IMG/VR virus record: IMGVR_UViG_3300020202_000001
Coordinates: 160,419 to 224,418 of that record
Strand: one strand, 5' to 3'
Length of the DNA stretch: 64,000 nt
Every line of letters starts with the position of its first letter. The stretch's first letter is position 1. The notes beneath the pieces were generated by a model. The model saw only the letters and a program-made list of their open reading frames with translations. It ran no database searches and was not told the origin of the DNA. Position numbers and translations under genes: made by a program. This document shows positions 10,093-62,919 of the stretch, piece by piece.

Positions 10093-10255
10093 GGCCCGGC
10101 GACAGTGGATGCGGCACTTCCGCCGGGTCTACCTCGACCGGACGGGCCTGCACTACATCGGCCCGATCACCGAGCTGCAGATGTTCCTCAACTGCAACTA
10201 CCTGCCGGAGACGGCGGTCTACCAGCTGACCGGGGTCGGCGGGGCCTGGATCTAA
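10046..10255 (+). CDS. small hypothetical protein
   Basis: coding-like GC3 bias; stop codon lies inside a palindrome copy. Confidence 0.55.
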   Translation: MTTVTCHPLSNYAAREARRQWMRHFRRVYLDRTGLHYIGPITELQMFLNCNYLPETAVYQLTGVGGAWI

Positions 10256-10272
10256 AAACCGGTTTTGAGATC
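10249..10272. promoter_or_regulatory. 24-bp palindrome copy upstream of the DNA polymerase
   Basis: gatcta-aaaa-ccgg-tttt-gagatc. Confidence 0.85.
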
Positions 10273-10282
10273 GGTGAGTCAC

Positions 10283-13200
10283 ATGCAGACAGTGAAGAAA
10301 CGACGCAAGATCATCACCGACCTCGACGCCGACGCGAAGAAGGCGGAAGCGAGGGCGGCACACAAGGAGATCGGTGGCAGCGGGCTGTACCCGCTCGACG
10401 CCCCGGGCATGCCCCTGCCCGGCCCCGACTTCATGGAACACGCCCGCAACCTGGGCGACCTCTCGGACTTCAAGAAGGTGAAGGTCGAGGGGCAGGGCAA
10501 GAAGAAGACCGACACGGTGCTCGACTCGATCGGCGACAAGCTGGTCGAGCTGCACCGCAGGGCTCTCCGCGAGCCCGGGTTCACGATGCCGATCCAGACG
10601 AAGCCGGGCATGCGCAAGAGCGTGCCGTTCGTGCCGGGTCACATCTGGGGCCAGTACATGAAGGAGTACGAGGCGGGCGACCGGATCGCGGTCGACGGCC
10701 CCCGCCCGGCCGACGTCATGGTCCTCGGCAAGATGCCGGGCAAGACGGAGGTGCAGGAAGGCCGGAACATGGTCGGCGAGTCCGGCAAGCTGCTGATCGA
10801 CGTGATCCGCGAGCACCACATCAAGGGCTCGCCGAACTGGTACGTGACGAACGTGCTGAAGTTCCAGCCGCCGGACAGCAGCGGCACGATCAAGGCCCCG
10901 TGGCTCAAGGACTGCATGCCGCTGCTCCACCAGGAGCTGCGGATCGTGCGGCCGAAGTACATCCTCTGCCTCGGGGCCGACGCGTCCAAGGCCCTGCTCG
11001 GGCCGAAGTACGGCGTCGACTACATGGACGGCCGGGTGATGGAGCTGGAGTACCCGGTCCACATGGAGGCGACGGACGACCCGGACAAGGTGCTGATGCA
11101 CAAGGCCCTGGTCATGACGGTCGTCCACCCGGCGGCCGTCGTCCGCGCCCCCGAGCAGCGCCGCCGGCTGGAGCGGGGCATGGCCCGCTTCGCGATGCTC
11201 CAGAACGGCATCCGGTTCGACAAGGAAGAGGTCGACATCGACCACCGGACGATCCGCACGCTGGAGCAGCTCCAGGCCCTGCTGCACGAGATCGACCACG
11301 ACCCCTACAAGAAGGACGACTGGATCTCGTTCGACGCGGAGTGGAACGGCGAGCACCCGCAGAACAAGGGCAGCTACGTCCGCACGATGCAGCTGGCGTG
11401 GCGGCCGAAGCACGCGGCCGCGATCATCTGGTCCGACACGACCGGCAAGTTCGTCTTCTGCGACGAGGACGGCAAGCCGGCCAAGAAGCGGGCGATCAAG
11501 CTGCTGAACGAGTGGTTCGCGACCAAGCGGATCACGATGCACTTCGGGGTGGCCGACCTGGAGTGGATGCAGTTCATCGGCCTGACCGAGCTGGCGAAGC
11601 GGTACCGGGTCCCGCTGTACGACAAGTTCTTCGGCGAGTTCGAGAAGCCACAGCGGAAGAAGCTGCGGAAGATGGGCTTCGCCCCCGGCGACCTCGTGCC
11701 GGCCTGGGTCCGCACCCACTTCGAGGGCGGGCACGACACCGGCCTCGCCGGCCACGCGATCGAGGAGACCGCCCAGCTCGGCCTCGAAGTGCTGGCGATG
11801 CGGTACACGACGTGCCCCCGGTACGACATCCCGCTCCACAACTGGAAGGAGGCGTTCTGCAAGGAGAAGGGGTACAAGGCCAAGGACCTCGAAGGGTACG
11901 GCCCCTGCCCCGACGAGATCATCGTGCCGTACGGCTGCTACGACGCGGACGCGACCCTGCGGCTGATGTACGAGCAGCTCCCGCTGATCGACAACGACTA
12001 CGAGGGCAACTGCTGCCGGGAGAGCTTCTGGGAGTCGATGCTCACCGTGGGGCCGATCCTGGAGATGCACTGCACGGGCATCCCGGTCGACCGCAAGCGG
12101 ATCGACTTCCTGACGGCCGCGTTCATGAAGGCCCGGGCCGAGCAGGAGGAGAAGATCCGCAAGTGGGCGAGGTGGCCGGAGTTCAACATCCGGTCCGTCA
12201 CCCAGGTGCGGGAGTTCCTGTTCGGCGAGAAGTACAACGGCAAGAAGACCCCGACCGGCGACATCGTCAGCGTCCGCCCCCGCAAGGGCGTGGACGGGGC
12301 GAAGCACACCGCCAAGAGCCTCTACCTCGAACCGATCCTCGACACGTCCAAGCCGCCCAAGGCGTGGTTCGACATCAAGGACAAGGGGCTCGAACACGAG
12401 CACACGCCCGGGACCGGCAAGACGATCCTCGGCGTGCTCGCGCAGGAGAACCAGGAGCAGAGCGAGTACGTCCAGTGGATTCGCGACTACCGGTTCCTCG
12501 ACCAGGTCCTCAAGAGCGTGCTCCGGCCGCCCGTGGTGGACAAGGACGGAGAGGTCGTGCGGGACGAGACGGCCGAGGCGGCCAGCAGCATCGACGCCTC
12601 GACCGGGCAGGAGGCCAGCCCGTACAGCTTCGGGCGGGACAACCTCGGCGGCGTGGTCTACGACGCCGGGCTCGCGGCCGTGATCTGCGGCGACGGCCGG
12701 GTGCGGACGCACCTGTACCCGACCACCGAGACCAAGCGGTGGCGGTCGGCCCGGCCGAACCTGCAGAACATGTCGAAGCGGCGGGACCCCGACTACACCC
12801 GCCTGCTGGGCGGCACGAAGAACGAGAAGGGCAAGTGGGTCGGCGGCGACTACAAGTACAAGCTGCGGTCGCTGCTGCACGCCATCCCCGGGCACGTCCT
12901 GGTCGAGGCGGACTTCATCGGCGCGGAGCTGTACCTGATGGCGGTCATGTCGGGCGACCCGACGATGATCGAGCACGCCACGCGGAACCAGCTGCCCGAG
13001 GACGACCCGCTCTACTACGACATCCACTCCAACGTCGCCGTGCTCGCCTTCAACCTGAAGTGCGAGCCGACGAAGAAGGGGCTGGAGTCGATCGGGAAGG
13101 TGTCCCTCCGCATCGCGGCGAAGAACGTGATCTTCGGCGTCGCCTACGGGCGGCAGGCGAAGGCGATCGCGCTGCAGTGCAAGGAGGAGGGCAACCCGAT

Positions 13201-13756
13201 CACGGTGCAGCAGGCGCAGATCATCATCGACATCGTGTTCCAGCTGTACCCGGGGCTCAAGCCGTTCTTCACCGAGGCCCAGCAGCGGTCGAAGGACCCC
13301 CGCTGGATCTGCTCGTGCTTCGGGGCGTTCCGCCGGTTCCCGCAGACCGACGACTTCTCGCTGCAGGGCGAGTTCGAGCGGCAGGCGATGAACTTCGGGA
13401 TTCAGTCGGGCATCGCCTCGGCCATGGACCGGGCGCTGGCCTACATGGAGGACTATCGCAACAACACGATCGGGGACCCGGACTTCTTCAAGTTCGCCCT
13501 CCAGATCCACGACGCCGTCCTGCTGCACGTCCCCTACGCCAACGTCGAGCGGGTCGTCGAGGACGTGCTGCCGTACAACCTGACCAAGCGGGTCGAGATC
13601 TACCCGACCACGCTCGACGGGGTGCCCACCGGCGAGGGTCCGTACCACCTGGGCATCGACACCGAGATCTTCGACCACTGGGGCGAGCCGCTCACGCCGA
13701 ACTTCTGCGAGGAGCACGGCATCCCCCTCAAGTACGCCAAAGGAAAGGCAGCGTGA
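10283..13756 (+). CDS. family A DNA polymerase with N-terminal uracil-DNA glycosylase-like domain
   Basis: UDG-4-like VMVLGKMPG..E..G..VGESG, YVTNVLK, HPA; exonuclease FDAE and YDAD; motif A EADFIGAEL, motif B RIAAKNVIFGVAYG, motif C QIHDA. Confidence 0.92.
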   Translation: MQTVKKRRKIITDLDADAKKAEARAAHKEIGGSGLYPLDAPGMPLPGPDFMEHARNLGDLSDFKKVKVEGQGKKKTDTVLDSIGDKLVELHRRALREPGFTMPIQTKPGMRKSVPFVPGHIWGQYMKEYEAGDRIAVDGPRPADVMVLGKMPGKTEVQEGRNMVGESGKLLIDVIREHHIKGSPNWYVTNVLKFQPPDSSGTIKAPWLKDCMPLLHQELRIVRPKYILCLGADASKALLGPKYGVDYMDGRVMELEYPVHMEATDDPDKVLMHKALVMTVVHPAAVVRAPEQRRRLERGMARFAMLQNGIRFDKEEVDIDHRTIRTLEQLQALLHEIDHDPYKKDDWISFDAEWNGEHPQNKGSYVRTMQLAWRPKHAAAIIWSDTTGKFVFCDEDGKPAKKRAIKLLNEWFATKRITMHFGVADLEWMQFIGLTELAKRYRVPLYDKFFGEFEKPQRKKLRKMGFAPGDLVPAWVRTHFEGGHDTGLAGHAIEETAQLGLEVLAMRYTTCPRYDIPLHNWKEAFCKEKGYKAKDLEGYGPCPDEIIVPYGCYDADATLRLMYEQLPLIDNDYEGNCCRESFWESMLTVGPILEMHCTGIPVDRKRIDFLTAAFMKARAEQEEKIRKWARWPEFNIRSVTQVREFLFGEKYNGKKTPTGDIVSVRPRKGVDGAKHTAKSLYLEPILDTSKPPKAWFDIKDKGLEHEHTPGTGKTILGVLAQENQEQSEYVQWIRDYRFLDQVLKSVLRPPVVDKDGEVVRDETAEAASSIDASTGQEASPYSFGRDNLGGVVYDAGLAAVICGDGRVRTHLYPTTETKRWRSARPNLQNMSKRRDPDYTRLLGGTKNEKGKWVGGDYKYKLRSLLHAIPGHVLVEADFIGAELYLMAVMSGDPTMIEHATRNQLPEDDPLYYDIHSNVAVLAFNLKCEPTKKGLESIGKVSLRIAAKNVIFGVAYGRQAKAIALQCKEEGNPITVQQAQIIIDIVFQLYPGLKPFFTEAQQRSKDPRWICSCFGAFRRFPQTDDFSLQGEFERQAMNFGIQSGIASAMDRALAYMEDYRNNTIGDPDFFKFALQIHDAVLLHVPYANVERVVEDVLPYNLTKRVEIYPTTLDGVPTGEGPYHLGIDTEIFDHWGEPLTPNFCEEHGIPLKYAKGKAA

Positions 13757-18829: not shown

Positions 18830-19477
18830 ATGAGCGACGACGCACCACGCAAGAACTGGTTCAGCGAGCGGATGAAGGGGCAGAACGCCCAAGGCCGCCT
18901 GGACCACGAGCTGTTGCAGTTCGAGGCCGAGCGGCTGAAGTGGCTGCTCCAGCGATTCGGGCTGAAGAAACGGATGCACCAGGTGATCCGCCGCTACCAC
19001 GCGGACACCGGCCGTTCGGAGCTTCGGTTCGAGGCGTTCAACGAAGTGTTCCCCACCTTCCCCTTCCTGATCGGGTGCACGAAGCTCCAGGGCGTACCGA
19101 TGCCCGGCCGCGTGTCCAAGAGCGGGCAGCAGAAGGTGACGCCGGTCGACTACCACATCTACCTCGACCCGGCCTCGACCGAGCCGGCGCGGTTCAAGAA
19201 CTTCACGAAGGTCCCGTTCGTCGGGGCCTACAAGGACTTCTACGCCGCGTCGGCCGGTCGGGCCAACGGTCGGAAGGTGGCACTGATCTTCCCGCGCAAG
19301 GGGTTCCTGCACGGGATGGTCATGCACAACGACTCCTCCGAGCAGTTCTGGACGGAGGGACTGTCGTGGGTGTACAAGGTGCCCGGGACGGAGAACCGCC
19401 TGTACGTCCAGCCCCTGTCGGCCCTCGTGGAGGCGATCTACGAGGGAGGCAGGGGGTGGCGTCCGCCCGGGGAGTAG
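18830..19477 (+). CDS. hypothetical protein
   Basis: 215-aa ORF, high GC3. Confidence 0.75.
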   Translation: MSDDAPRKNWFSERMKGQNAQGRLDHELLQFEAERLKWLLQRFGLKKRMHQVIRRYHADTGRSELRFEAFNEVFPTFPFLIGCTKLQGVPMPGRVSKSGQQKVTPVDYHIYLDPASTEPARFKNFTKVPFVGAYKDFYAASAGRANGRKVALIFPRKGFLHGMVMHNDSSEQFWTEGLSWVYKVPGTENRLYVQPLSALVEAIYEGGRGWRPPGE

Positions 19478-19500
19478 ATCTCAAAACCGGTTTTTAGATC
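19477..19500. promoter_or_regulatory. 24-bp palindrome copy
   Basis: gatctc-aaaa-ccgg-tttt-tagatc, ending 3 bp upstream of a -35 box. Confidence 0.85.
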
Positions 19501-19503
19501 CCC

Positions 19504-19532
19504 TAGACATTCCCCCTGACGGGGGATAGACT
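19504..19532 (+). promoter_or_regulatory. sigma70-type promoter for the ParB-like gene
   Basis: TAGACA-17 bp-TAGACT. Confidence 0.55.
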
Positions 19533-19590
19533 CCGGCCACGTCGCCGGAACGACTGAACACCACTCACAGAAGAAGGAGACCCCAAGACC

Positions 19591-20484
19591 ATGAGCAAGA
19601 ACGAATCCACGCTTCTCCCCGAAGAGCAGAAGCGCGCGGCGATCTACGAAGAGATGTCCCCGGCCCTCAAGAAGGTCGCGGACGACTTCCGCAAGAAGGA
19701 GGCCGTCGCCTCCAAGGGCAACCTCACCCTCCGCTACGACATGGGCGTGAAGGTGAAGCAGGTGATCGAGGAGGAGGCCGAGTACGGCGCGAACGCCGTC
19801 AAGCAGCTCGCCGCCTTCCTCGGCCGCTCGGAGACGGACCTGTACGACCTGCGGAACGTCGTGACCACCTACGACAAGGACGAGATCATCGCCCTGTCGG
19901 AGCGCGAGATGGCCAACGGCGGGCACATCACGATGGGCCACGTCATGGCCATCGTCCGCGTGAAGAAGCAGGCCGACCGGAAGAAGCTGTGGGACCGCGT
20001 GTTCGCCGAGTCCCTCACCGTGGGCCAGCTCGCCGGCGAGGTGTCGGCCGGGTACGAGAAGGCCAACAAGCGCTCGGGCGGCCGCAAGCCGTCCAAGCCG
20101 ACGAGCCCCGTGGCGGGCATCGCCCAGATCGCGGAGCGGACGCAGGAGCTGAACAACCGCTTCGAGGGCTGGGACGAGACCGTGTTCACGGCCATCGCCG
20201 ACCTCCCCCCGGACAAGATCGACAAGATCGTCCTGGAGAAGGCCGAGAAGGCCAGCGCGGAGCTGCACAAGCTGGAGGAGAACCTCACCCAGTACGTCGG
20301 CAAGTACGACAAGGGCGTCGAGCACATCCGCAAGGTCGTGGCGGCGAAGGCGAAGGAAGAGGCCGACGCCAAGGCCGAGCACAAGAAGGAAGAGAAGCAG
20401 CTCGAAGGCAAGGGCGCGAAGAAGGCAGTCGGCAAGAAGGCCGACGCGAAGGCCGGCAAGAGCCGCCGGCCCGCTGCCGCCTAA
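19591..20484 (+). CDS. ParB/Spo0J-type HTH DNA-binding protein lacking the CTPase domain
   Basis: LGRSETDLYDLRNVV and ITMGHVMAIVRV...LWDRVFAESLTVGQL resemble the Spo0J DNA-binding domain; coiled-coil and basic tail; strong RBS aaggag. Confidence 0.6.
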   Translation: MSKNESTLLPEEQKRAAIYEEMSPALKKVADDFRKKEAVASKGNLTLRYDMGVKVKQVIEEEAEYGANAVKQLAAFLGRSETDLYDLRNVVTTYDKDEIIALSEREMANGGHITMGHVMAIVRVKKQADRKKLWDRVFAESLTVGQLAGEVSAGYEKANKRSGGRKPSKPTSPVAGIAQIAERTQELNNRFEGWDETVFTAIADLPPDKIDKIVLEKAEKASAELHKLEENLTQYVGKYDKGVEHIRKVVAAKAKEEADAKAEHKKEEKQLEGKGAKKAVGKKADAKAGKSRRPAAA

Positions 20485-25207: not shown

Positions 25208-25231
25208 GATCCAAAAACCGGTTTTGAGAAG
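25208..25231. promoter_or_regulatory. 24-bp palindrome copy fused to the thyX RBS
   Basis: gatcca-aaaa-ccgg-tttt-gagaag then gag; ATG at 25240. Confidence 0.85.
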
Positions 25232-25239
25232 GAGCGTGC

Positions 25240-26313
25240 ATGAGTTTCGTACTCCCCAAGGTCTTCCGCGTCGGCTACACGAAGGTCGACTTCGAGCAGG
25301 TGTCCGAGTACCTGCGGTACACCAAGCAGGAGCTGTTCGCCGGCGAGCTGCAGGCCGCCAAGGAGGACGGCATCAGCCCGGCCGAGGCCCTGTGCTCGAT
25401 GTTCGGCAAGATGTGCTACAAGAGCCTCGTGCTCGGGCAGAACGCGAACGTGAAGAAGGTGCGGGCCGTCCGCGAGAACCTGGCCGGCACGTTCGCCAGC
25501 GGGCACGGGTCCGTGTTCGAGCACGTCGGGTTCAACTTCATCGTCACCGACTGCAGCCGCGTGTTCACGCACGAGCTGGTGCGGCACCGCGTCGGCACGG
25601 CGTTCAGCCAGACGAGCGGCCGGTACGTCCGCCCGGTCCCGAACGAGCAGGGCGAGCTGGACATCGCGTTCGTCCACGACCCGATCCTCGACCCCGTCCG
25701 CGAGAACATCGAGAACGTCCTCTCCTACCTGGCGATGAACTACCAGGACATGGAGATCAAGCTGGGCATCGCCGACCCGGAGGTCGTGGCCAAGCGGCTC
25801 AAGCAGGTCCGCGAGGACATGGTCGGGGCGCAGGGCTCCCTCCTGGCCGAGCTGCAGGCCGAGGCGGACGAGCTGGCGGCGTACAAGGTGACCGTCGACA
25901 ACTTCGAGCTGAAGAAGAAGCTGACGTCGGCGCTGCGTCGCATCCTGCCGAACGGGCAGGCGAACGAGATCGCGTTCAGCGTGAACATCCGCACGCTCCG
26001 CCACTGCGTCCAGATCCGCACGCAGCGGTTCGCCGAGTGGGAGATCCGGGCGGTCTTCGCCCAGATCTACCAGCTCATCAAGGACAAGTTCCCCATGGTC
26101 TTCCACGGGGCCAAGGAGCGGATCGTCGACGGCCTGCCCGAGGTGTACGGCATGAAGCTCCAGCCGTACGACGTGACGGTCGAGGGCCTGCCCGACGTCG
26201 AGCTGCTGAACGAGGCCGCCTTCCGCAACTTCAAACGGCTTTCCCCCGCGACGGAGAAGCTGCTCAAGGACGGCGCGACCGCCGCCCTCAACGAGCTGCT
26301 GCCCGCCGCATAA
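25240..26313 (+). CDS. thyX: flavin-dependent thymidylate synthase
   Basis: GHGSVFEH, signature RHR-x5-SQTSGRY, NIRTLRH, WEIR. Confidence 0.92.
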   Translation: MSFVLPKVFRVGYTKVDFEQVSEYLRYTKQELFAGELQAAKEDGISPAEALCSMFGKMCYKSLVLGQNANVKKVRAVRENLAGTFASGHGSVFEHVGFNFIVTDCSRVFTHELVRHRVGTAFSQTSGRYVRPVPNEQGELDIAFVHDPILDPVRENIENVLSYLAMNYQDMEIKLGIADPEVVAKRLKQVREDMVGAQGSLLAELQAEADELAAYKVTVDNFELKKKLTSALRRILPNGQANEIAFSVNIRTLRHCVQIRTQRFAEWEIRAVFAQIYQLIKDKFPMVFHGAKERIVDGLPEVYGMKLQPYDVTVEGLPDVELLNEAAFRNFKRLSPATEKLLKDGATAALNELLPAA

Positions 26314-37700: not shown

Positions 37701-37724
37701 GATCTAAAAACCGGTTTTGAGAAG
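37701..37724. promoter_or_regulatory. 24-bp palindrome copy between a candidate promoter and the RBS
   Basis: gatcta-aaaa-ccgg-tttt-gagaag; TGC-TAAGAT at 37668-37676 upstream; ATG 37733. Confidence 0.85.
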
Positions 37725-37732
37725 GAACTCCA

Positions 37733-39424
37733 ATGTCCCGAGCAGGCATGCGAAGCTCAGCGGCCGGCGGCCACGTCGCACCGTGGTGGCAGGCGAACAA
37801 CCAGGGCGGCGACAACGACGTCGTCGCCCACACGCCCGACCCGACCAAGTACCACTCGACCAGCTCGGACGGCGACCAGGCGAACAAGCTCGGGCACGGC
37901 CCCCGCGGCCTGATGGGTGCCGTGATCCCCCGGGCACGCAACGACGGCAGCTCCCGCGGCTTCGACCACAACCGCGCGGGCGTCGTCGTCGTCGACCCCA
38001 ACGCCCCGGACGGCGGCGTCGTGCTCGACCTCGACAACCTCCAGAACGCCGAGACGCAGGACGCGCTCGAACAGGTCGGCTACAACGTCGGCTACGGCCG
38101 CGAGACGGACCAGGAGACGTACGCCGCGATCGCGATGCTCAGCAAGCCGATCAGCGAGGCGACGCTGGAGGACGTGACGCCCGAGTACCTGATCGACTCG
38201 GTGGCGTCCGGCCCCGTCAAGCGTGCCGCCGACCAGGCCGTCAACCAGATGCGGTCGAACCGGTACGCCCCCAACTCGTACGTCACCCCGCGGGGCGACA
38301 GCGAGGGCCGCCAGCGTCACGACCTCGGCACCTCGGCCAACCGGCCCGTCCGCCGCCGCGTCGAGCCCGTGCGGGACGAGCCCGTCGCCCGCCCCGCCCC
38401 GCAGCGGCGGGCACCGGCGCACGCCAAGCCCGCGCCGCAGCCCCAGCGCCGGGCGGTCACCCGCCCGCAACCGACAGCCCCGGTGCTCGACGTCGAGCCC
38501 GAGTACGAAGAGAAACTCCCCTACGAAGAGGAAGCACCAGTCATGGCCAAGCAAGGAAGCGCCCGCCCCGCCCAACGCCCCGCCCCGCAGCAGCCGGCCC
38601 GCCGGCCAGCCGCCCGCCCGCAGCCCGTCGCCGAGGAGGTCGAGGTCGACCCGCTGGAGCTGCTGACCAAGCTGGCCGCGTCGCAGGGCATGAAGCTCGC
38701 CCCCGCCCGCCCGCAGCCCCGCCGCCGCGTGGCCGAGCTGCCGCCCGAGGAGGAGGCGTACGACGAGCAGCCGGAGGCGTTCGTCGACGAGGACGAGGAG
38801 ATCCTCGACGAGCAGGAGGTCGACTTCCCGCCCCAGGCCCAGGCCCCTCGCCGGGCTCAGCAGCCGGCCCACCGCCACCCGCCCACGTCGGCGATCCACC
38901 GCCCCGGGACGCCCACGCCCCGCCAGGGCCGCGCCCAGGCCCCGCAGCGTCGCCCGGTGCCCCGCCAGCGGCCGCAGGAGCAGTTCTACGAGGAGGACGC
39001 CCCCGAGGCCGCGCAGCGTGGCCCGGACATGGGCGAGCTGTTCTCCGCCCTGGCCCTGTCGTTCGTCTCGGGCGTCGAGGCGGAGAAGCCGAAGAAGACC
39101 GCCGTGTTCGACCTCGGGCCGGGCGGCATCCTCCGCAAGCGGTACCACGAGATCATCCAAGGTGCGGACTGCGTGGTTCTGGTGTACGATACTCGTTACG
39201 AGGACGGCGAGCAGTGGGTGCCGCCCCAGACCGACGAGGCGTTCACCGTCGCGATCCCGGACGCCAAGAAGGCCGGGAAGCCGGGCGACCCGATCGCCGT
39301 CCGGTCGTTCGGGCTGCAGTTCAGCCTCGGCTGCATGGACGTGATCGTCCTCGTCAACGCCGAGGACGCCGCCCCCGAACACGCCCTGATGGGCGACGCC
39401 GACGAGGAGGACCTGAACGGCTGA
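37733..39424 (+). CDS. hypothetical protein with P/Q/R-rich disordered centre
   Basis: 563-aa ORF; globular ends flank a low-complexity core; precedes the portal-like gene. Confidence 0.8.
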   Translation: MSRAGMRSSAAGGHVAPWWQANNQGGDNDVVAHTPDPTKYHSTSSDGDQANKLGHGPRGLMGAVIPRARNDGSSRGFDHNRAGVVVVDPNAPDGGVVLDLDNLQNAETQDALEQVGYNVGYGRETDQETYAAIAMLSKPISEATLEDVTPEYLIDSVASGPVKRAADQAVNQMRSNRYAPNSYVTPRGDSEGRQRHDLGTSANRPVRRRVEPVRDEPVARPAPQRRAPAHAKPAPQPQRRAVTRPQPTAPVLDVEPEYEEKLPYEEEAPVMAKQGSARPAQRPAPQQPARRPAARPQPVAEEVEVDPLELLTKLAASQGMKLAPARPQPRRRVAELPPEEEAYDEQPEAFVDEDEEILDEQEVDFPPQAQAPRRAQQPAHRHPPTSAIHRPGTPTPRQGRAQAPQRRPVPRQRPQEQFYEEDAPEAAQRGPDMGELFSALALSFVSGVEAEKPKKTAVFDLGPGGILRKRYHEIIQGADCVVLVYDTRYEDGEQWVPPQTDEAFTVAIPDAKKAGKPGDPIAVRSFGLQFSLGCMDVIVLVNAEDAAPEHALMGDADEEDLNG

Positions 39425-44410: not shown

Positions 44411-44434
44411 GTTTTCAAAACCGGTTTTTAGAAG
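44411..44434. promoter_or_regulatory. palindrome copy upstream of the tubulin gene
   Basis: gttttc-aaaa-ccgg-tttt-tagaag followed by RBS aaggag. Confidence 0.8.
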
Positions 44435-44450: not shown

Positions 44451-45722
44451 ATGTCCAACGACGCAGAACAACGCATGGCCGCCAGCACCGACGCCGCCGC
44501 CCGCAAGCCCGCCGCCGTGGCCGTCTCGGCCCCGCGGCCCCGCCCCGGGATCGCGAACGTGGCCGCCCAGGTCGCCAACGCAAACCGCTCGACCGCCACC
44601 AAGCCCCAGAAGATCGAGGACGCGTTCGACCACGAGGTCGCGTTCCGCTTCGCCTTCCTCGGTGCCGGGCAGGGCGGCGGCCGGATCGCCAACGCGTTCT
44701 ACGAGCTGGGCTACCGCCGGGTGGGCGTGTTCAACACGACCGACTCCGACTTCAACGGGCTGAACGAGGACATCGTCAAGCTGAACCTGAAGACGGGCGG
44801 GTCGGCCAAGGACACCGAGCTGGCCCGCCGCTCGCTCTCGGGCCGGGAAGAGGAGGTCCGCGACCTCCTGACCAAGGCGTGGGGCCAGGACGTCGACGTC
44901 GCCATGATCTCGGCCAGCCTCGGCGGCGGCACGGGCAGCGGCACGGCCCCCGAGCTGGTGAAGATCGCCCGCCAGTACCTCAAGGACCAGGGCAAGCCCG
45001 CCCGCGTCGGCGCGATCGTCAGCCTGCCCAACCGGGCCGAGGGCTTCCAGGTCTGCCGCAACGCCGTGAACGGGTTCAAGGCCCTGCAGGAGATGGGGGT
45101 CAGCCCGCTGATCGTCATCGACAACGCCCGGGTCGAACAGGTCTACCAGCCGTCGTTCACGAAGGTGTTCGCCACGGCCAACCAGACGGCCAGCACCTAC
45201 CTGCACCTGTTCAACCAGCTCGCCGCCGTCCACTCCGAGTTCATCACGTTCGACAAGAGCGAGTTCGCCCAGCTGCTCGACAGCGGGCTCGTCGTGATGG
45301 GCACGAGCGACATCCAGCAGATCGACAGCCCGGCCGACATCAGCTCGGCCATCCGCGACCAGATCGCCGGCAGCGTGCTCGCCCAGGTCGACCTGACCAC
45401 GGGCAACACGGCCGCCTGCCTGTTCGTCGGGTCGCAGGACGTGCTCGACCGCTTCACCACGGCGTACTTCGACGCCGGGTTCACCCAGCTCAACCGTACG
45501 CTCGCCACGAACAAGCCCGAGGGCACGCGGACCGTCGTGCACCGGGGCGTGTACCTCGGGGCCGACCCGGGGCTGCAGGCGTACGTCATGGTCGGCGGGC
45601 TCGCCCTGCCGTTCGCGTTGCTCGCCGATCTGGCCAAGGAGGGCGGTATCCCCGCCGGCGGGGGCGGCAACAGCCGTCTCGCCTCGTACCTGGGAGTGGA
45701 AGACGCACAGGCCCCGAAGTAG
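44451..45722 (+). CDS. tubulin/FtsZ-family GTPase (TubZ/PhuZ/CetZ-like)
   Basis: FLGAGQGGGRIA, signature SLGGGTGSG, VIDN, T7-like FDKSEF. Confidence 0.88.
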   Translation: MSNDAEQRMAASTDAAARKPAAVAVSAPRPRPGIANVAAQVANANRSTATKPQKIEDAFDHEVAFRFAFLGAGQGGGRIANAFYELGYRRVGVFNTTDSDFNGLNEDIVKLNLKTGGSAKDTELARRSLSGREEEVRDLLTKAWGQDVDVAMISASLGGGTGSGTAPELVKIARQYLKDQGKPARVGAIVSLPNRAEGFQVCRNAVNGFKALQEMGVSPLIVIDNARVEQVYQPSFTKVFATANQTASTYLHLFNQLAAVHSEFITFDKSEFAQLLDSGLVVMGTSDIQQIDSPADISSAIRDQIAGSVLAQVDLTTGNTAACLFVGSQDVLDRFTTAYFDAGFTQLNRTLATNKPEGTRTVVHRGVYLGADPGLQAYVMVGGLALPFALLADLAKEGGIPAGGGGNSRLASYLGVEDAQAPK

Positions 45723-49344: not shown

Positions 49345-49368
49345 GATCTCAAAACCGGTTTTTGGATC
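49345..49368. promoter_or_regulatory. 24-bp palindrome copy
   Basis: gatctc-aaaa-ccgg-tttt-tggatc. Confidence 0.85.
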
Positions 49369-49391
49369 TCCTCAAGGAAGAGGGTATTCGC

Positions 49392-50429
49392 ATGCAACAC
49401 AACGCCCGCATGGACGCGAACAAGCTGTACGTCGTCACCGCGATCTCGAACCCGGTGAGGTACGCCAGCCGCTACAAGCTGTACTTCGAGTTCGAGAAGC
49501 GGATGCGGGACGCCGGCGTCACGCTCATCACGGTCGAGGTGCAGCTGGGCGACCGCCCGTTCTGCGTCACCGAGCGTGACAACGTGAACCACGTCCAGCT
49601 CCGCACCTGGTCCGAGATCTGGCACAAGGAGAACGCCCTCAACATCGGCGTGCAGCACCTGTCGCAGATCCACCCGGACTGGGAGTACGTCGGCTGGTTC
49701 GACGCGGACATCAGCTTCGCCAACCCGGCCTGGGCCACGGAGACGATCCAGGCCCTCCAGCACCACATGCTCGTGCAGCCGTGGTCGCACACGCTCGACC
49801 TGAAGCCGGACTTCGCCCCGTGCGAGTGGTTCTACAAGACGGGGAAGGAGACGCTGAAGCCCGCGAGCTGGGGCTACTGCCACGTCAACGGCGTGCCGAT
49901 GGCCAACACGGACCTGGGCAAGAGCCTGGCCAACGGCGGGAAGATGGACCGCAGCTGTGACGGGTACGGCGAGCAGGGCGGCACGTACTACTGGCACCCG
50001 GGCTTCGCCTGGGCCGCGCGGCGTGAGGCGTGGGACCACCTGGGCGGGCTGATCGACTACAGCATCCTCGGGGCCGCGGACTACATCATGGGGGCGGCGC
50101 TCACGGGGAAGGGAGAGGTCGGCCTCGCCTCGTGGATGCACCCGAACTACGTCCGGTGGATCAAGCAGTGGAAGGACCGGGCCGACAAGTACATCCAGGG
50201 CGACGTCGGGTACGTGCCCGGCCTGCTCCTGCACTACTGGCACGGGAAGAAGGCCCAGCGGGGCTACAAGGACCGGTGGCGGATCTTCCACGACCACGGC
50301 TTCGACCCCGAGCTGGACCTGAAGCGTGACAGCCAGGGCCTGTACCAGCTGACCGACCGCAGCCCCGGCCTCCGCGACGGGTGCCGGGCGTACTTCCGCC
50401 AGCGGAACGAGGACAGCGTCGACTGCTAG
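49392..50429 (+). CDS. GT-A fold glycosyltransferase-like protein
   Basis: WHKENALNIG, WFDADI (DxD), HPGFAWA, HYWHG. Confidence 0.65.
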   Translation: MQHNARMDANKLYVVTAISNPVRYASRYKLYFEFEKRMRDAGVTLITVEVQLGDRPFCVTERDNVNHVQLRTWSEIWHKENALNIGVQHLSQIHPDWEYVGWFDADISFANPAWATETIQALQHHMLVQPWSHTLDLKPDFAPCEWFYKTGKETLKPASWGYCHVNGVPMANTDLGKSLANGGKMDRSCDGYGEQGGTYYWHPGFAWAARREAWDHLGGLIDYSILGAADYIMGAALTGKGEVGLASWMHPNYVRWIKQWKDRADKYIQGDVGYVPGLLLHYWHGKKAQRGYKDRWRIFHDHGFDPELDLKRDSQGLYQLTDRSPGLRDGCRAYFRQRNEDSVDC

Positions 50430-50514: not shown

Positions 50515-53500
50515 ATGAGCATGATCCCCGGACAGCAGATGGGCGGACCGATGGGTAGCCCCGGCATGGGCATGGCCCCGAGCATGAGCGGCAGCATGGC
50601 GTTCCCCCGCAGCCTGTTCGGTGGCATGGGGCGAGGCATGAAGGCACCGCCCAACCCGGCCGCACACCCCCAGGCACCCCAGAGCCAGCCCGCCACCGCA
50701 GACGTGGTCGGGCAGATGGCACAGCAGGCCCACCAGCAGAACGCCCAGGCCAAGATCGCCGGTTTCGAGGCGCGCCGTAACGAGCCCGGTCTGCAGCAGC
50801 CCAGCAGCGTCGACCCGGTGAAGACGGCCTACGAGCAGTATCAGGCCCAGCTAGGCCAGAGCCAGAGCACGGGGAGCACCGTTGCCCAGGCCCAAACCGG
50901 GGTGGACGGCCTCCCCAAGGGCCAGAAGACGGCGGCGGCTGCCGTAACTGCTGCTGCCTCGACGGCGGCGGCGGATTTCCACGGCAATCCGTCCACATGG
51001 GCCGCCCTTCGAGCCCTGCCACTAACGAACAAGCGCGCCAGCGCCGTGCCGCCCCCCGCCCAGGCCCTCCCCGCCGACCCGGGCATGGGGCCGATGAGCA
51101 CGGCCATCTCCGCACCGCCCGCAGCACCGGCAGCGGCGGCTCCGGCACCCGTTGGAGGGACGCCCCCAGCGCAGCCGGACCCCGCCATGGGCGGACAGGC
51201 GGGCGGGATGGCCCAGGCTCCGGCCCCTGCCCCGGCGGCGGGCGGGATGGCGGCACCGGCACCGGCACCGGGCATGCCGCCCGTCCCCGGTCAGGCACCG
51301 GCCCAGATGCCCCCGGGCACGATGCAGCAGGACGCCGGCGTGCAGCAGTCCATGGGGGAACTCTTTCAGGAAGCGAACGCTCCCGACTCCGCAGGTGACG
51401 ACATGAAGTTCCAGAACATCGTGCAGGCCTCCGACCACTGGGGGCTCGAACGCTTCGCGAAGACCGCCGCGCCGGGCGACCTGTTCGACGTCGAGGGCGA
51501 CCTCGCCGCGATGGACGCCGAGCAGCAGCCCGCCGTGAAGCAGAAGCCCGCCCTCCCGCCCGTGGCCGCCAAGCCGCCCGCGACGCGTCCGGCGGCCCCC
51601 GCCACGCAGCCCGCAGGAGCCCCGCAGGGCGTTCGACCCCCTCAGGGCACACCCCAGGCCCCGAAAATCGCTCCTGGGCCGTCTGGTAGCCTCCCCGGGG
51701 CATCCCGGCCGCCCGTCCAGCCGCGTCCCGTGCCGGTTCAGCCCGGTGCGGGGCGGGCTCAGCCGCTGCCGACCGCCCCGCCGGCCGCCAAGCCCGTGCC
51801 CGTGCGTCCGCCCGCCACCCGTCCGGCCCCGGTCGCCCCCGGCTCGGGGATGATTAACGGGAAGCCGGCGAGCCAGGTGCTCAAGGGCATCCCGAAGCAG
51901 GGCTCGACCGTGCAGGACGACGCGGCCGAGGCGGCCCTCCGCACGTTCGTGTTCGGCAAGCAGGCGTGGCAGGACAACGGCGTGAAGGACCGCACCTCGG
52001 CGAGCGGCGAGAGCACGAACGTCGGGTTCGCCCACCGCAACGACGACTACGACCGCGGCCCGGCCGCGTGGGAGAACAGCGCGAAGTACCTGAAGCACGG
52101 GGCCAAGGGCGGCGACCGCCGCATCCCGTCGAGCAGCACCACGAAGCTCGCCAAGGCCCGCCAGGGCGAGACGACGTTCGGGCAGGACAGCAAGCCGGGC
52201 GACAAGCTCGCCCAGCTCGTGAAGAAGATCCTGTCCAAGCGGGGCGTGAAGCCCGCCCCGGGGACCAAGCAGGCGGCCAACCTCGCCAACGAGGCCAAGC
52301 GGCAGGGCATCTACCAGGGGGCGACGCAGGCCCCGGCACCGGCCCCCGCCGGCCGCCCCGCCGCCGCGACCAAGCTCCCGCCGATGGTGACGGGTGCCGC
52401 CCCGGCCATGCCGAAGGCGGCCGGGTACGGCGCGTTGGCCGGTGTCGGGGCCGCCCTCGGCGGCCTGCTCGGCGGCGGGGCGTACGTGGCTGCGAACCCG
52501 ACCGCCCCCTCGCGGCTGGCGGCGATGGGCACGGACTCCACCGCCTTCCCCGGGGCGGTCAACAGCGTCGGCGGCGGGGCGTTGCTCGGCGGGGCCGGCG
52601 GTGCCCTCGTCGAATACCTCCGCCGCCGCAAGGCCGAGGCGGAACAGCCGGCGACGCTCCCGGGCACGGCCAAGGCGGCCGCCGCGGTCGCCGCCAAGAA
52701 GCCGTTCCCCGCCACGGCCGGGCTCCTGCAGACGGAGAACGACCTGCGGGAGGACGAGGAGGCCGAGAAGGTGGCCCTGACCGTCGAGGACGGCGGGCTG
52801 CCGAGCCGCGCCCTGGCGAACACGGTCGGGCACGTCGGCAACACGCTCGGGCTGGCCGGGCCGATCATGTCCCTGCGGTCGTACGTGAACCCGCAGGGCA
52901 CGCCGCAGCGGCGGCAGAAGCACGAGGAGTCGGCCGGGCTGCTGGAGGCGGCCGAGCCGGACGCCCTCTCGGGCACGAAGCTCCGCCTCGGCGGGTCGGA
53001 CCTGGTCGACGACCTCCTGTGGAAGCGGGAGGAGCCCGGGCAGGACCTCCCGTGGACGCAGCAGATCGGCGGGCGGAACTTCCAGAACCCCCGCACCGGG
53101 CCGCTCGGCAAGGCGCTGGGACTGATCTCGACCCCGCTGGCCGCCCTGCAGGGCAACCTGCTGCGTGCGCCGCACTACAACCCCGAGACCGACGTCGCCA
53201 CGAACTACTGGGACGAGCGGGGCGTGACCGAGCACGAGCTGGGCCACGCGATCGACTTCAACACCGTGTCGAGCGAGAAGGGCAAGGGCAAGGTCAGCGA
53301 CTCGTGGCTCGGCCGCCAGGGCCGCGGGACGGTGCGGGACCTGTACCGCCTCGCCTACGGCATCCCGGGCGTCAACCTGTGGCACGAGGCCCAGGCGAAC
53401 CGCAAGAGCTGGAAGGCCCTCGAATCGCAGCTCGGCAAGGGGAGCGACAAGCTCCTGGAGCACGAGTACGACCGGGCGAAGGTCCTGCCGGCCGGGTACG

Positions 53501-54159
53501 GCTCGTACATCGGCAACACGCTGTCCCCGCTCCTCGGCCCGGCCGGGGCGATCGGCGGCATGGTCGGCGGCAAGGTGGTCGGCACCGCCCGCCGCGACGC
53601 GATCGAGAGCGAGCAGCGAGCCCGGGCCGCCGAGAAGCGCCGGGGGTGGAGCGAGCGTGACGGCGACAACGACGGGCACGTCAACGACGGCCGCCCGGAC
53701 GAGCGGGACTACCGCAAGGCCGCCGGCTTCCTCGACAACGTCAAGAACACGGACTGGAAGGCCGCCCTCCCGGGCGTCGCCGGCCGGGCCGGGGTCGGGG
53801 CGGCGCTGGGCGGCGGCGTGGCCGGGATCGCCCACCTGATGAAGGGCGACGAGGAGAAGAAGCGGAAGGGCAACGGTGCCCTGGCCACGGTCGGCAAGGG
53901 AGCCCTGCTCGGCGGCGGGATCGGGACGGGCATCGGCCTGTCCCGCGAGGTGGTCGGCCCGGCCCTGAAGAAGGGGTCGGCCGTCGACCGGCTCGTCAAG
54001 CGTGCCGCCCTCCGCGCGTTCGTGAAGAAGGCGGCCGTCACGCCGGGCCTGGCCCAGCGGCTGCGGAAGATGAAGGCGGAGAAGACCGTCCGCCAGTACC
54101 AGCCCGCCACGGACTCGATCCGCAGCGGGGACAGCGACAACGACGTGAAGGCGGCCTGA
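50515..54159 (+). CDS. large modular low-complexity protein (putative virion polyprotein) with HExxH metallopeptidase module
   Basis: 1214 aa; P/A/G/Q-rich; recurrent K-x-A motifs; TEHELGH plus downstream LWHEAQAN; glycine-zipper segments. Confidence 0.8.
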   Translation: MSMIPGQQMGGPMGSPGMGMAPSMSGSMAFPRSLFGGMGRGMKAPPNPAAHPQAPQSQPATADVVGQMAQQAHQQNAQAKIAGFEARRNEPGLQQPSSVDPVKTAYEQYQAQLGQSQSTGSTVAQAQTGVDGLPKGQKTAAAAVTAAASTAAADFHGNPSTWAALRALPLTNKRASAVPPPAQALPADPGMGPMSTAISAPPAAPAAAAPAPVGGTPPAQPDPAMGGQAGGMAQAPAPAPAAGGMAAPAPAPGMPPVPGQAPAQMPPGTMQQDAGVQQSMGELFQEANAPDSAGDDMKFQNIVQASDHWGLERFAKTAAPGDLFDVEGDLAAMDAEQQPAVKQKPALPPVAAKPPATRPAAPATQPAGAPQGVRPPQGTPQAPKIAPGPSGSLPGASRPPVQPRPVPVQPGAGRAQPLPTAPPAAKPVPVRPPATRPAPVAPGSGMINGKPASQVLKGIPKQGSTVQDDAAEAALRTFVFGKQAWQDNGVKDRTSASGESTNVGFAHRNDDYDRGPAAWENSAKYLKHGAKGGDRRIPSSSTTKLAKARQGETTFGQDSKPGDKLAQLVKKILSKRGVKPAPGTKQAANLANEAKRQGIYQGATQAPAPAPAGRPAAATKLPPMVTGAAPAMPKAAGYGALAGVGAALGGLLGGGAYVAANPTAPSRLAAMGTDSTAFPGAVNSVGGGALLGGAGGALVEYLRRRKAEAEQPATLPGTAKAAAAVAAKKPFPATAGLLQTENDLREDEEAEKVALTVEDGGLPSRALANTVGHVGNTLGLAGPIMSLRSYVNPQGTPQRRQKHEESAGLLEAAEPDALSGTKLRLGGSDLVDDLLWKREEPGQDLPWTQQIGGRNFQNPRTGPLGKALGLISTPLAALQGNLLRAPHYNPETDVATNYWDERGVTEHELGHAIDFNTVSSEKGKGKVSDSWLGRQGRGTVRDLYRLAYGIPGVNLWHEAQANRKSWKALESQLGKGSDKLLEHEYDRAKVLPAGYGSYIGNTLSPLLGPAGAIGGMVGGKVVGTARRDAIESEQRARAAEKRRGWSERDGDNDGHVNDGRPDERDYRKAAGFLDNVKNTDWKAALPGVAGRAGVGAALGGGVAGIAHLMKGDEEKKRKGNGALATVGKGALLGGGIGTGIGLSREVVGPALKKGSAVDRLVKRAALRAFVKKAAVTPGLAQRLRKMKAEKTVRQYQPATDSIRSGDSDNDVKAA

Positions 54160-54181
54160 TCTCAAAACCGGTTTTGGGATC
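54158..54181. promoter_or_regulatory. 24-bp palindrome copy
   Basis: gatctc-aaaa-ccgg-tttt-gggatc. Confidence 0.85.
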
Positions 54182-57638: not shown

Positions 57639-57662
57639 GATCCAAAAGCCGGTTTTTGAAAG
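57639..57662. promoter_or_regulatory. palindrome copy
   Basis: gatcca-aaag-ccgg-tttt-tgaaag. Confidence 0.75.
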
Positions 57663-62710: not shown

Positions 62711-62919
62711 TCGAGATCCGACGTGACGCGGAGCTGATCCACGCCGAGCTTGTCGCCGGCGGGATGCAGGACTTCGACGTCTTCCTCTACCGGTACGCCA
62801 ACGCCTGCTGTGCCCTCGAACTCCTCCGGGAGGAGGGACGGGTGACCCGCAGCGCGTTCATGGTGTTGGCGGCCGATCCAAAAACCAGTTTTGAGAAGGA
62901 GCAACAGCCATGTGGATGA
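62692..62919 (+). CDS. small hypothetical protein
   Basis: RBS ggagg, ATG 62692; its C-terminal codons carry a palindrome copy. Confidence 0.55.
   Translation: MCTGTLIEIRRDAELIHAELVAGGMQDFDVFLYRYANACCALELLREEGRVTRSAFMVLAADPKTSFEKEQQPCG
62875..62898. promoter_or_regulatory. palindrome copy fused to an RBS
   Basis: gatcca-aaaa-ccag-tttt-gagaag then gag; ATG 62910. Confidence 0.8.

What the first reader, a model, noticed from the sequence alone, without database searches (positions are those of the whole stretch)
19477..20484. CTPase-less ParB-type protein whose promoter abuts a palindrome copy
Seen: a palindrome ends at 19500 and the TAGACA-17-TAGACT promoter starts at 19504. The protein has GRS-x-L (recognition helix) and ITMGH...LTVGQL segments matching the Spo0J/ParB DNA-binding domain, then a coiled coil and a Lys/Ala tail, but no N-terminal ParB/Srx CTP-binding domain. 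Established: ParB-family proteins often autoregulate through their own site. Inference: this is the best candidate binder of the 24-bp palindrome, acting as a non-sliding adaptor or regulator.
Basis: partly seen in the sequence, partly recalled or inferred. Interest (0 to 1): 0.7.

Follow-up and report, generated by a model that had tools for sequence, protein, structure and literature searches.

The report
ParB-type DNA binder beside dispersed phage palindrome
A 297-residue protein of an uncultured 224-kb soil phage has the DNA-binding domain of the ParB partition proteins but not their CTP switch. It is a plausible but unproven reader of an AT-rich near-palindrome that recurs about 35 times, evenly spaced, along the phage genome.

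Summary
The 24-bp near-palindrome (19477-19500) starts in the stop codon of the upstream gene. A TAGACA-17-TAGACT promoter-like site follows at 19504-19532. ORF 19591-20484 encodes a helical protein whose residues 43-154 match the ParB/Spo0J/Noc DNA-binding domain. There is no ParB N-terminal CTPase domain. A long coiled-coil-like helix and a disordered Lys/Ala tail follow.

The window is the end of a 224-kb circularly assembled phage genome (68% GC) with its own RNA polymerase beta subunit and a sigma factor. The palindrome core occurs 35 times, mostly in tiny gaps just before start codons, and far more evenly spaced than chance. The protein is a core gene of the replication/recombination module in a large clade of uncultured 140-225-kb phages.

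A variant of the palindrome lies directly upstream of the homologous gene in 14 of 19 loci, down to 24% identity. A recognition-helix/centre covariation idea failed its test. The protein-DNA complex could not be folded.

I put binding of the palindrome by this protein at about 0.5. RNA-hairpin readings are disfavoured.

The parts
18830..19477 (+). Upstream 215-aa ORF of unknown fold. Its stop codon overlaps the palindrome. A homologue directly precedes the ParB-HTH gene in nearly all relatives.
   Evidence: synteny; conserved C-terminal ...GHGW(R/K)P in the upstream flanks read
19477..19500 (.). 24-bp quasi-palindrome copy (GATCTC-AAAACCGGTTTT-TAGATC).
19504..19532 (+). Promoter-like site: -35 TAGACA, a 17-nt spacer holding a CCCCC-TGAC-GGGGG inverted repeat (19512-19525), and -10 TAGACT. 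It is one of six sites of this class in the genome.
   Evidence: conserved in L009; -10 TACACT at the matching place in L010, L011 and L013; TAGACT in L036
19535..19546 (.). Second, gene-specific dyad GGC-C-ACGT-C-GCC at the predicted transcription start. The matching sequences are CCACGTGG in L011 and GACCACGTCGTC in L009.
   Evidence: read; none of the other five hairpin-class promoters has it
19576..19579 (+). Shine-Dalgarno GGAG, 11 nt before the ATG.
19591..20484 (+). CDS of the 297-aa ParB-HTH / YhcG_N-like protein (P0001).
19717..20052 (+). DNA-binding domain, aa 43-154. The HTH helices are aa 69-77 and 81-93, with the family motif T-x-LY-x-LRN. The conserved G110 and H117 lie in the ITMGH segment.
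20071..20091 (+). Most conserved motif of the family, R-S-G-G-R-K-P (aa 161-167), in the loop after the domain. It looks AT-hook-like; that reading is an inference.
   Evidence: position in the model
20107..20412 (+). Two long helices (aa 173-203 and 212-274). They are coiled-coil-like and the presumed dimerisation element.
20413..20481 (+). Disordered Lys/Ala-rich tail ending in a conserved (K/R)RPAAA-type C-terminus.
10249..10272 (.). Palindrome copy just before the PolA-UDG gene. This position is conserved in relatives.
25208..25231 (.). Palindrome copy 8 nt before ORF 25240-26313. In L009, L010, L014 and L035 a copy lies before the ThyX gene.
37701..37724 (.). Palindrome copy 8 nt before ORF 37733-39424.
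44411..44434 (.). Palindrome copy 16 nt before ORF 44451-45722.
49345..49368 (.). Palindrome copy before ORF 49362-50429 (the likely ATG lies further downstream).
54158..54181 (.). Palindrome copy overlapping the stop of ORF 50515-54159, 35 nt before ORF 54217-54792.
57639..57662 (.). Palindrome copy (core with 1 mismatch) 12 nt before ORF 57675-58367.
62875..62898 (.). Palindrome copy (core with 1 mismatch) 11 nt before ORF 62910-63575.

Best explanation
ORF 19591-20484 encodes a stand-alone ParB-type helix-turn-helix DNA-binding protein of the YhcG_N/DUF1016_N kind. It has no CTP-binding clamp domain. It is a core early-type gene of the replication/recombination module in a large clade of uncultured jumbo phages.

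Most likely it dimerises through its long C-terminal helices. The dimer would sit statically on the quasi-palindrome TC-Y-M-AAAA-N4-TTTT-K-R-GA: the two HTH domains read the outer TCT/AGA and A/T-tract half-sites, and the invariant GGRKP loop lies in the narrow minor groove of the A-tracts. One copy abuts its own promoter, which would allow autoregulation. About 35 further copies lie at the 5' edges of gene blocks, where the bound protein would modulate transcription across the phage genome.

Shown: the fold, the missing CTPase domain, the dispersed element, its conserved placement and its weak RNA structure. Inferred: dimerisation, binding to this element, the role of the GGRKP loop, and the regulatory outcome.
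For: Fold and family:
- AF2 model with pLDDT 92 and pTM 0.78.
- The Foldseek PDB top 30 are all ParB/Spo0J/Noc DNA-binding domains; the Noc domain 6y93_A gives TM 0.69 and rmsd 2.8.
- The VIA-align top two are ParB DNA-binding domains, Z 7.6 and 6.8.
- DUF1016_N matches 104 of 130 family members and HTH_ParB matches 24 of 130.
- The family profile hits Spo0J and ParB chains.
- AFDB and Atlas neighbours are YhcG_N, DUF1016 and ParB-HTH proteins.
- No ParB_N domain.

The element acts at the DNA level:
- 35 copies, 27 of them intergenic.
- RNA folds are no better than shuffles, z from -0.35 to +1.36.
- Positions 6/19 are Watson-Crick in only 7 of 35 copies.
- The two orientations occur 17:10 although about 90% of genes are on one strand. 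This argues against a directional promoter or terminator and for a symmetric reader.

Link to this gene:
- A variant element lies directly upstream of the homologue in 14 of 19 loci.
- In L028 it is the only full match in 15 kb (one weaker 3-mismatch match lies at 1178); in L029 it is the only pattern match in 9 kb.
- The centre is uniform within a genome and differs between genomes: CCGG in G000, GTAC in 15 copies of G001. This points to a phage-encoded reader that is conserved across the clade.
- The invariant A/T tracts in the DNA parallel the invariant LY-x-LRN and GGRKP motifs in the protein.
- No other ParB-HTH, HTH_3, WhiB or Lsr2 protein was detected in the genome.

Transcription link:
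- TANNNT hexamers lie within 45 nt upstream of 9 of 35 copies, against 0.9 expected.
- Several copies have terminator-like hairpins just upstream.
Against: - No binding test was possible.
- Copies upstream of PolA (5 of 6 loci) and ThyX (about 5 of 9) are conserved about as well as the copy upstream of this gene. The placement therefore does not single out this protein.
- L035 has palindromes but none before this gene. L013, L026 and L027 also lack one there.
- The recognition helix is nearly invariant while the palindrome centre changes. The residue-86/centre covariation failed on two new loci.
- Most proteins of the genome have no recognisable domain and could include another binder.
- Most copies (22 of 35) have no recognisable host-type -10 nearby.
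- One copy lies in a convergent gap after a terminator.
- The strikingly even spacing is not predicted by a simple operator model.
Confidence: 0.4

Rival explanations
1. The palindrome is read by something else: the phage RNA polymerase with its sigma factor, another unannotated phage protein, or a host factor. The ParB-HTH protein then serves the replication/recombination module with a different DNA target. That target could be the ACGT-centred dyad at its own transcription start, replication or recombination intermediates, or non-specific DNA bound through its basic tail.
For: - The gene always sits after the UvsX/RecA-like gene and the ~200-aa ORF, within helicase-primase-PolA-Tmk synteny.
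- The phage encodes an RNAP beta subunit (E 1e-54) and a sigma70_r2 protein.
- A second, gene-specific dyad lies at the predicted start.
- Palindrome copies before PolA and ThyX are conserved equally well, and L035 lacks the copy at this gene.
- There is no helix/centre covariation.
Against: - Sigma-type promoters and terminators are directional, yet the element occurs in both orientations 17:10 on an almost one-stranded genome.
- Host factors would not explain centres that are genome-specific across phages of 46-71% GC.
- No other classical sequence-specific HTH was found.
- The element is at this gene in 14 of 19 loci.
Confidence: 0.33
2. The protein does bind the palindromes, but they are not promoter-level operators. 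They form an evenly spaced array that organises the phage chromosome: loop anchors or condensation, loading points for replication or recombination, or multiple origins.
For: - Spacing has CV 0.38 in G000; none of 100,000 random placements reached it, even when placement was restricted to intergenic gaps.
- Spacing has CV 0.46 and P 0.001 in the related 202-kb genome G001, which has a different centre.
- 8 of 35 copies lie inside ORFs, and one lies in a convergent gap.
- The gene lies in the replication/recombination module.
- The Lys/Ala tail resembles non-specific DNA-condensing tails of actinobacterial nucleoid proteins (from general knowledge; not tested).
Against: - The strong preference for gaps right before start codons, and the enrichment of -10-like hexamers, fit gene expression.
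- A 12-bp AT core is short for an unwinding element.
- There is no partner ATPase of the ParA type nearby.
Confidence: 0.15
3. The palindrome works as an RNA or single-strand hairpin: an intrinsic terminator, an RNase III-type processing site, or a translational operator next to the Shine-Dalgarno sequence. In that case the neighbouring protein is irrelevant to it.
For: - Copies lie between co-directional genes, and the right arm often runs into GGAG.
- T7-like phages place processing hairpins in such gaps (general knowledge).
Against: - Minimum free energies are -2.3 to -7.3 kcal/mol with z-scores around 0.
- Pair 6/19 is complementary in only 7 of 35 copies and pair 5/20 in 12 of 35, the opposite of compensatory change.
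- There is no U-tract.
- The centre is self-complementary (CCGG, GTAC, CTAG) in several genomes, which a loop does not need.
- Separate GC-rich terminator-like hairpins lie upstream of several copies.
Confidence: 0.04

Closest known systems
ParB/Spo0J and Noc (CTP-dependent DNA clamps binding parS or NBS palindromes)
   Same: - The same DNA-binding domain fold.
- Weak but consistent sequence similarity over the HTH and the LSxGH...L(S/N)VRxLE helices.
- The target would likewise be a palindrome read by a dimer.
   Different: - No N-terminal ParB/Srx CTPase domain, so no clamp closure or sliding.
- No ParB_C dimerisation domain; a long coiled-coil helix and a Lys/Ala tail take its place.
- No ParA partner gene nearby.
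- The host is a lytic-type phage, not a chromosome or plasmid.
KorB of plasmid RK2 (a ParB-family global repressor with many dispersed palindromic OB operators)
   Same: - A ParB-type HTH paired with a palindrome scattered over the replicon at roughly one site per 5-6 kb (the RK2 density is from my own knowledge). Some sites are promoter-proximal and others are not.
- The OB core TTTAGCGGCTAAA (PMC11790492) contains the same TTTAG/CTAAA words.
   Different: - KorB acts as a CTP-dependent sliding clamp locked by KorA (PMC11790492). This protein has no CTPase domain.
- The shared words are arranged in everted order in the phage element.
- Binding is unproven here.
YhcG / DUF1016 proteins (DUF1016_N domain fused to a PD-(D/E)XK nuclease) and DUF3102-type phage proteins
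   Same: - The N-terminal domain is the closest sequence family: 104 of 130 members hit PF17761, best E 2e-14.
- The closest predicted structures are YhcG_N/DUF1016 proteins.
- DUF3102 phage proteins appear among the viral fold matches.
   Different: - No YhcG_C nuclease domain.
- P0001 itself scores below the Pfam threshold: 19.1 bits against 32.8.
- I found no experimental characterisation of these families.
The 17-bp dyad repeats of Cluster O mycobacteriophages, and the stoperators and start-associated sequences of other actinophages
   Same: - More than 30 copies of a short dyad-symmetric repeat spread through an actinophage genome. They are mostly intergenic, mostly not at recognisable promoters, and are predicted to bind a dimeric protein of unknown identity (PMC4351075).
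   Different: - The sequence differs (an AT-rich core in a 68% GC genome).
- The copies here are evenly spaced and mostly just upstream of start codons.
- Here a conserved candidate reader can be named and the element can be traced across a deep phage clade.

Membership tests
ParB/Spo0J partition protein family | N-terminal ParB/Srx CTP-binding domain (PF02195, GERRxRA box) | tested here: not met
   No PF02195 hit in the ORF. The only genome hit is 12.6 bits, elsewhere and below the cut-off. In the model, residues 1-60 are two helices.
ParB/Spo0J partition protein family | ParB-type HTH DNA-binding domain (PF17762) | tested here: inconclusive
   By sequence the match is below threshold: 20.9 bits against 22.6, with 24 of 130 relatives matching. 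By fold it is met: the Foldseek top 30 are all ParB/Noc DNA-binding domains, and VIA-align gives Z 7.6 and 6.8.
ParB/Spo0J partition protein family | C-terminal ParB dimerisation domain and a cognate ParA ATPase gene | tested here: not met
   No ParB_C hit; long helices occupy that position. None of the ten neighbouring ORFs scanned hits a ParA-type ATPase family in Pfam or PHROGs.
ParB/Spo0J partition protein family | Specific binding to a palindromic centromere-like site | not testable with these tools
   The protein-DNA job was not folded. Only comparative placement is available.
YhcG_N / DUF1016_N domain family (PF17761) | Match to PF17761 above the gathering score | tested here: inconclusive
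   P0001 scores 19.1 bits against a cut-off of 32.8. However, 104 of 130 aligned relatives match, best E 2e-14, and precomputed PF17761 hits exist for P0005, P0006 and P0157.
YhcG / DUF1016 nucleases | C-terminal PD-(D/E)XK nuclease domain (YhcG_C) | tested here: not met
   No such hit. The C-terminal half is two long helices plus a disordered tail.
KorB-like global regulators | Many dispersed palindromic operators on the same replicon | tested here: met
   35 copies in 224 kb and 15 copies in the related G001. That this protein binds them is not shown.
KorB-like global regulators | CTP-dependent clamp and a clamp-locking partner (KorA) | tested here: not met
   No CTPase domain. No partner was identified.
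Intrinsic terminator / RNA processing hairpin | A stable stem kept by complementary or compensatory positions | tested here: not met
   Folding z-scores run from -0.35 to +1.36. Pair 6/19 is complementary in only 7 of 35 copies.

The most novel reading that the evidence does not exclude
A ParB domain that has lost its CTP switch has been recruited, in a large clade of uncultured jumbo phages with their own RNA polymerase, as the static reader of an evenly spaced, genome-wide array of quasi-palindromes. The array would partition the phage chromosome into ~6-kb units for replication or recombination loading, or for loop organisation. That would make it a phage 'centromere array' rather than a set of promoter operators.
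Probability: 0.12. Interest if true: 0.8.

Novelty: new variant of a known kind. Interest (0 to 1): 0.55.

Why it matters
Dispersed dyad repeats of unknown function have been described in actinophage genomes with no reader identified (PMC4351075). Here a conserved, phage-encoded candidate with a known DNA-binding fold can be named, and the element can be followed across a deep clade of uncultured 140-225-kb phages.

If the link holds, it shows a ParB DNA-binding domain working without CTP-dependent sliding. It would also give a tractable entry into how jumbo phages that carry their own RNA polymerase punctuate or organise their genomes. The even spacing is an unusual, testable property.

If the link fails, the protein is still a new, widespread core replication-module protein, with about 2,400 cluster representatives in the metagenome library.

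Tried and rejected
- Protein dimer plus 32-bp DNA complex prediction: the job was counted but not folded. It is no evidence either way.
- tblastn and megablast against cultured phages and plasmids: no relative of the protein or the region. The PolA gene finds only T5-like and SPO1-like polymerases at about 25% identity.
- Scan of bacterial and archaeal genomes: no relative, so the family gives no sign of prophage residence.
- Exact-pattern scan of IMG/VR for the palindrome: only unrelated single matches.
- Sequencing runs: only soil DNA metagenomes hold the sequence and no RNA run does. Transcript ends could therefore not be mapped, and read laying was not used.
- Covariation between residue 86 of the recognition helix and the 4-bp centre: it looked promising in 13 loci but failed on two loci chosen as a test, L035 and L036.
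- Hairpin, terminator or processing-site reading: rejected on folding and pair counts.
- Directional promoter reading: disfavoured by the 17:10 orientation split.
- Upstream 215-aa ORF: no family or fold lead.
- Literature: no characterisation of DUF1016_N or DUF3102 found.
Full report
**What the window is.** The window is the last 64 kb of a 224,418-bp IMG/VR virus record. Its "direct terminal repeat" is an exact 127-bp overlap, so the record is a circular assembly. The genome is about 68% GC, and nearly all genes with a convincing GC3 signal are on the + strand. It encodes a bacterial-type RNA polymerase beta subunit (PF00562, E 1e-54, inside a 1512-aa frame) and a sigma-70 region 2 protein. 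It has no cultured relative. The protein and the region find nothing among deposited phages and plasmids, and the polymerase is only about 25% identical to T5-like and SPO1-like enzymes.

**The observation.** The 24-mer at 19477-19500 is there, and its first base is the last base of the upstream gene's TAG stop. TAGACA-17-TAGACT at 19504-19532 is the only sigma-70-like site in the 2 kb around it, where shuffles give a mean of 0.1. The spacer carries a CCCCC-N4-GGGGG inverted repeat. The same architecture (-35, C5-N3-4-G5, -10) recurs at only six intergenic places in the genome; the looser -35/-10 pattern gave 7 forward hits against 1.2 expected. The site is conserved in the 79%-identical relative L009. 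L010, L011 and L013 keep a TACACT -10 at the corresponding place, and L036 keeps TAGACT. The promoter is therefore probably real and of a host-like, presumably early, type. ORF 19591-20484 has a GGAG 11 nt upstream, and its start agrees with its homologues.

**The protein.**
- Pfam gives only sub-threshold hits to HTH_ParB (aa 105-148) and DUF1016_N (aa 44-148).
- The family is large: 2,404 cluster representatives at E <= 1e-3.
- Of 130 aligned members, 104 match DUF1016_N (best E 2e-14) and 24 match HTH_ParB.
- A family profile hits Spo0J (6sdk) and Myxococcus ParB over the LSxGH...LSVRxLE helices.
- The AlphaFold2 model is confident (pLDDT 92, pTM 0.78) and all-helical.
- Its 30 best Foldseek PDB matches are all ParB, Spo0J or Noc DNA-binding domains. 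The isolated Noc domain 6y93_A gives TM 0.69 and rmsd 2.8 A.
- The two best matches of the Foldseek-independent search are also ParB DNA-binding domains, at Z 7.6 and 6.8. By that tool's own caveat these values are modest for helical proteins.
- AFDB and Atlas neighbours are YhcG_N/DUF1016, ParB-HTH and DUF3102 proteins.
- There is no ParB N-terminal CTPase domain in the ORF, and none above the cut-off in the genome.
- After the domain comes the most conserved motif of the family, R-(S/A)-G-G-R-K-P. Two long helices follow (173-203 and 212-274, matching coiled coils), and then a low-confidence Lys/Ala tail with a conserved RRPAAA-type end.

Its closest family is the uncharacterised YhcG_N kind of ParB-type HTH domain.

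**The palindrome.**
- *Number and placement.* The core AAAACCGGTTTT (up to 1 mismatch) occurs 35 times in the genome. Nine copies are in the window and 27 are intergenic. Typically the upstream stop codon overlaps the left arm and the next start codon lies 8-35 nt after the right arm.
- *Spacing.* The copies are strikingly evenly spaced: mean 6.4 kb and CV 0.38, against 0.97 for random placement. None of 100,000 simulations was as regular, even when placement was restricted to gene gaps.
- *Not a structural hairpin.* RNA folds are no better than shuffles. Mirror positions 6/19 are A-G or C-T in 27 of 35 copies (Fisher p 0.001). The element is therefore a quasi-palindrome that occurs in two orientations, 17:10, on an almost one-stranded genome. 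That argues against a directional promoter or terminator and for recognition of double-stranded DNA by a symmetric reader.
- *Link to promoters.* -10-like TANNNT hexamers are enriched within 45 nt upstream: 9 of 35 copies against 0.9 expected, five of them at offsets -23 to -30. Four copies, including this one, have such a hexamer downstream. About a third of the copies thus sit near host-type promoters, in two geometries. The rest have none.

**Relatives.** The gene is part of a conserved block: DnaB-like helicase, primase, PolA fused to a UDG-like domain, thymidylate kinase, a 590-760-aa ORF, a UvsX/RecA-like protein, a ~200-aa ORF, and then this gene. The block is found on metagenomic contigs of 140-225 kb from soil to marine samples. 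No relative was found in bacterial genomes.

Each phage has its own variant of the element, with constant A/T tracts and a 4-bp centre that differs between genomes:
- CCGG in G000 and L011.
- GTAC in the 202-kb genome G001, with 15 copies whose spacing has CV 0.46 and P 0.001.
- CTAG/CCAG in L010 and L034.
- GTGG in L014, L031 and L028-30.
- CCCC/CCAC in L036.

A variant lies directly upstream of the homologue in 14 of 19 loci, down to 24-27% identity. In L028 it is the only full match in 15 kb, with one weaker 3-mismatch match elsewhere; in L029 it is the only pattern match in 9 kb. This is the main support for a link between gene and element.

The link must be discounted for two reasons. Copies just upstream of PolA (G000, L032-L035) and of ThyX (G000, L009, L010, L014, L035) are conserved about as well. 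L035 has three copies in 21 kb but none at this gene.

**A failed test.** In 13 loci, residue 86 of the recognition helix seemed to follow the centre type. I chose two further relatives with A or E at that position as a test, and neither behaved as predicted. There is thus no covariation evidence. The near-invariance of the recognition helix, set against a variable centre, remains unexplained.

**Verdict on mechanism.** The fold and domain architecture are established at about 0.9. I put binding of the quasi-palindrome by this protein at about 0.5. The reasons are:
- It is the only ParB-type HTH in the genome, with no HTH_3, WhiB or Lsr2 protein found.
- It is conserved across the same clade as the element.
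- It is usually linked to a copy.
- Its invariant motifs parallel the invariant A/T tracts.

That it acts as a static, autoregulated regulator at the edges of transcription units is an inference (overall 0.4). The alternatives are another reader for the palindrome (0.33), the same reader with a chromosome-organising or replication role suggested by the even spacing (0.15), and a hairpin function (0.04). The decisive tests are therefore biochemical.

**Comparison with known systems.** The protein works most like KorB of RK2, a ParB-type HTH with dispersed palindromic operators (PMC11790492). It is not a member of the ParB/KorB family, because the defining CTPase domain, the ParB_C domain and a ParA partner are all absent. 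The element resembles the unexplained 17-bp dyad repeats of Cluster O mycobacteriophages (PMC4351075). I rate it a new variant of a known kind, of moderate interest.

Noticed in passing
whole genome G000 (window copies at 10249, 19477, 25208, 37701, 44411, 49345, 54158, 57639, 62875): The 35 palindrome copies are far more evenly spaced than chance: CV 0.38, not reached in any of 100,000 simulations. The related 202-kb genome G001 shows the same tendency with a different palindrome centre (CV 0.46, P 0.001).
   Followed up: partly
G000:C1:21647-26152 and G000:C1:124048-124242 (outside the window): The phage encodes a bacterial-type RNA polymerase beta subunit (PF00562, E 1e-54, in a 1512-aa frame) and a sigma-70 region 2 protein. 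One degenerate palindrome copy lies inside the beta gene.
   Followed up: no
window 19504-19532; genome 1062, 33788, 144641, 152311 (+) and about 11808 (-): A small class of six promoter-like sites has a CCCCC-N3-4-GGGGG inverted repeat inside the -35/-10 spacer. All six are intergenic.
   Followed up: partly
window 19535-19546: An ACGT-centred dyad (GGC-C-ACGT-C-GCC) lies at the predicted transcription start of the gene. It is kept as CCACGTGG in L011 and GACCACGTCGTC in L009 and is absent from the other hairpin-class promoters. It could be a gene-specific operator.
   Followed up: no
all 35 copies; the 24-mer positions 5-6 and 19-20: Mirror positions 6/19 are A-G (17 copies) or C-T (10 copies) and are rarely complementary. 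Exactly one arm carries a fifth A or T. Perfectly symmetric copies are under-represented (Fisher p 0.001).
   Followed up: partly
window 20071-20091 and 20461-20481: R-S-G-G-R-K-P is the most conserved motif of about 130 aligned relatives. A (K/R)RPAAA-type C-terminus is also widely kept. The former resembles AT-hook-like minor-groove motifs; the latter looks like a docking peptide.
   Followed up: no
window 18830-19477: The 215-aa ORF directly upstream is kept next to the gene across the whole clade. It has no family or confident fold (Atlas model pLDDT 0.36).
   Followed up: partly
window 10265-13756: The DNA polymerase A carries an N-terminal uracil-DNA-glycosylase-superfamily domain. The fusion is conserved in all relatives that hold the gene.
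   Followed up: no
whole genome G000: Tetranucleotide biases are strong. CTAG occurs 34 times against 624 expected, ATAT 0 times against 123, and GCGC at 0.26 of expectation. GATC is at 2.7 times and TCGA at 3.3 times expectation.
   Followed up: no
G000 ends: The 'direct terminal repeat' is an exact 127-bp overlap, typical of a circular assembly join rather than a physical terminal repeat. The same contig appears in the metagenome collection in another rotation or orientation (L025).
   Followed up: partly
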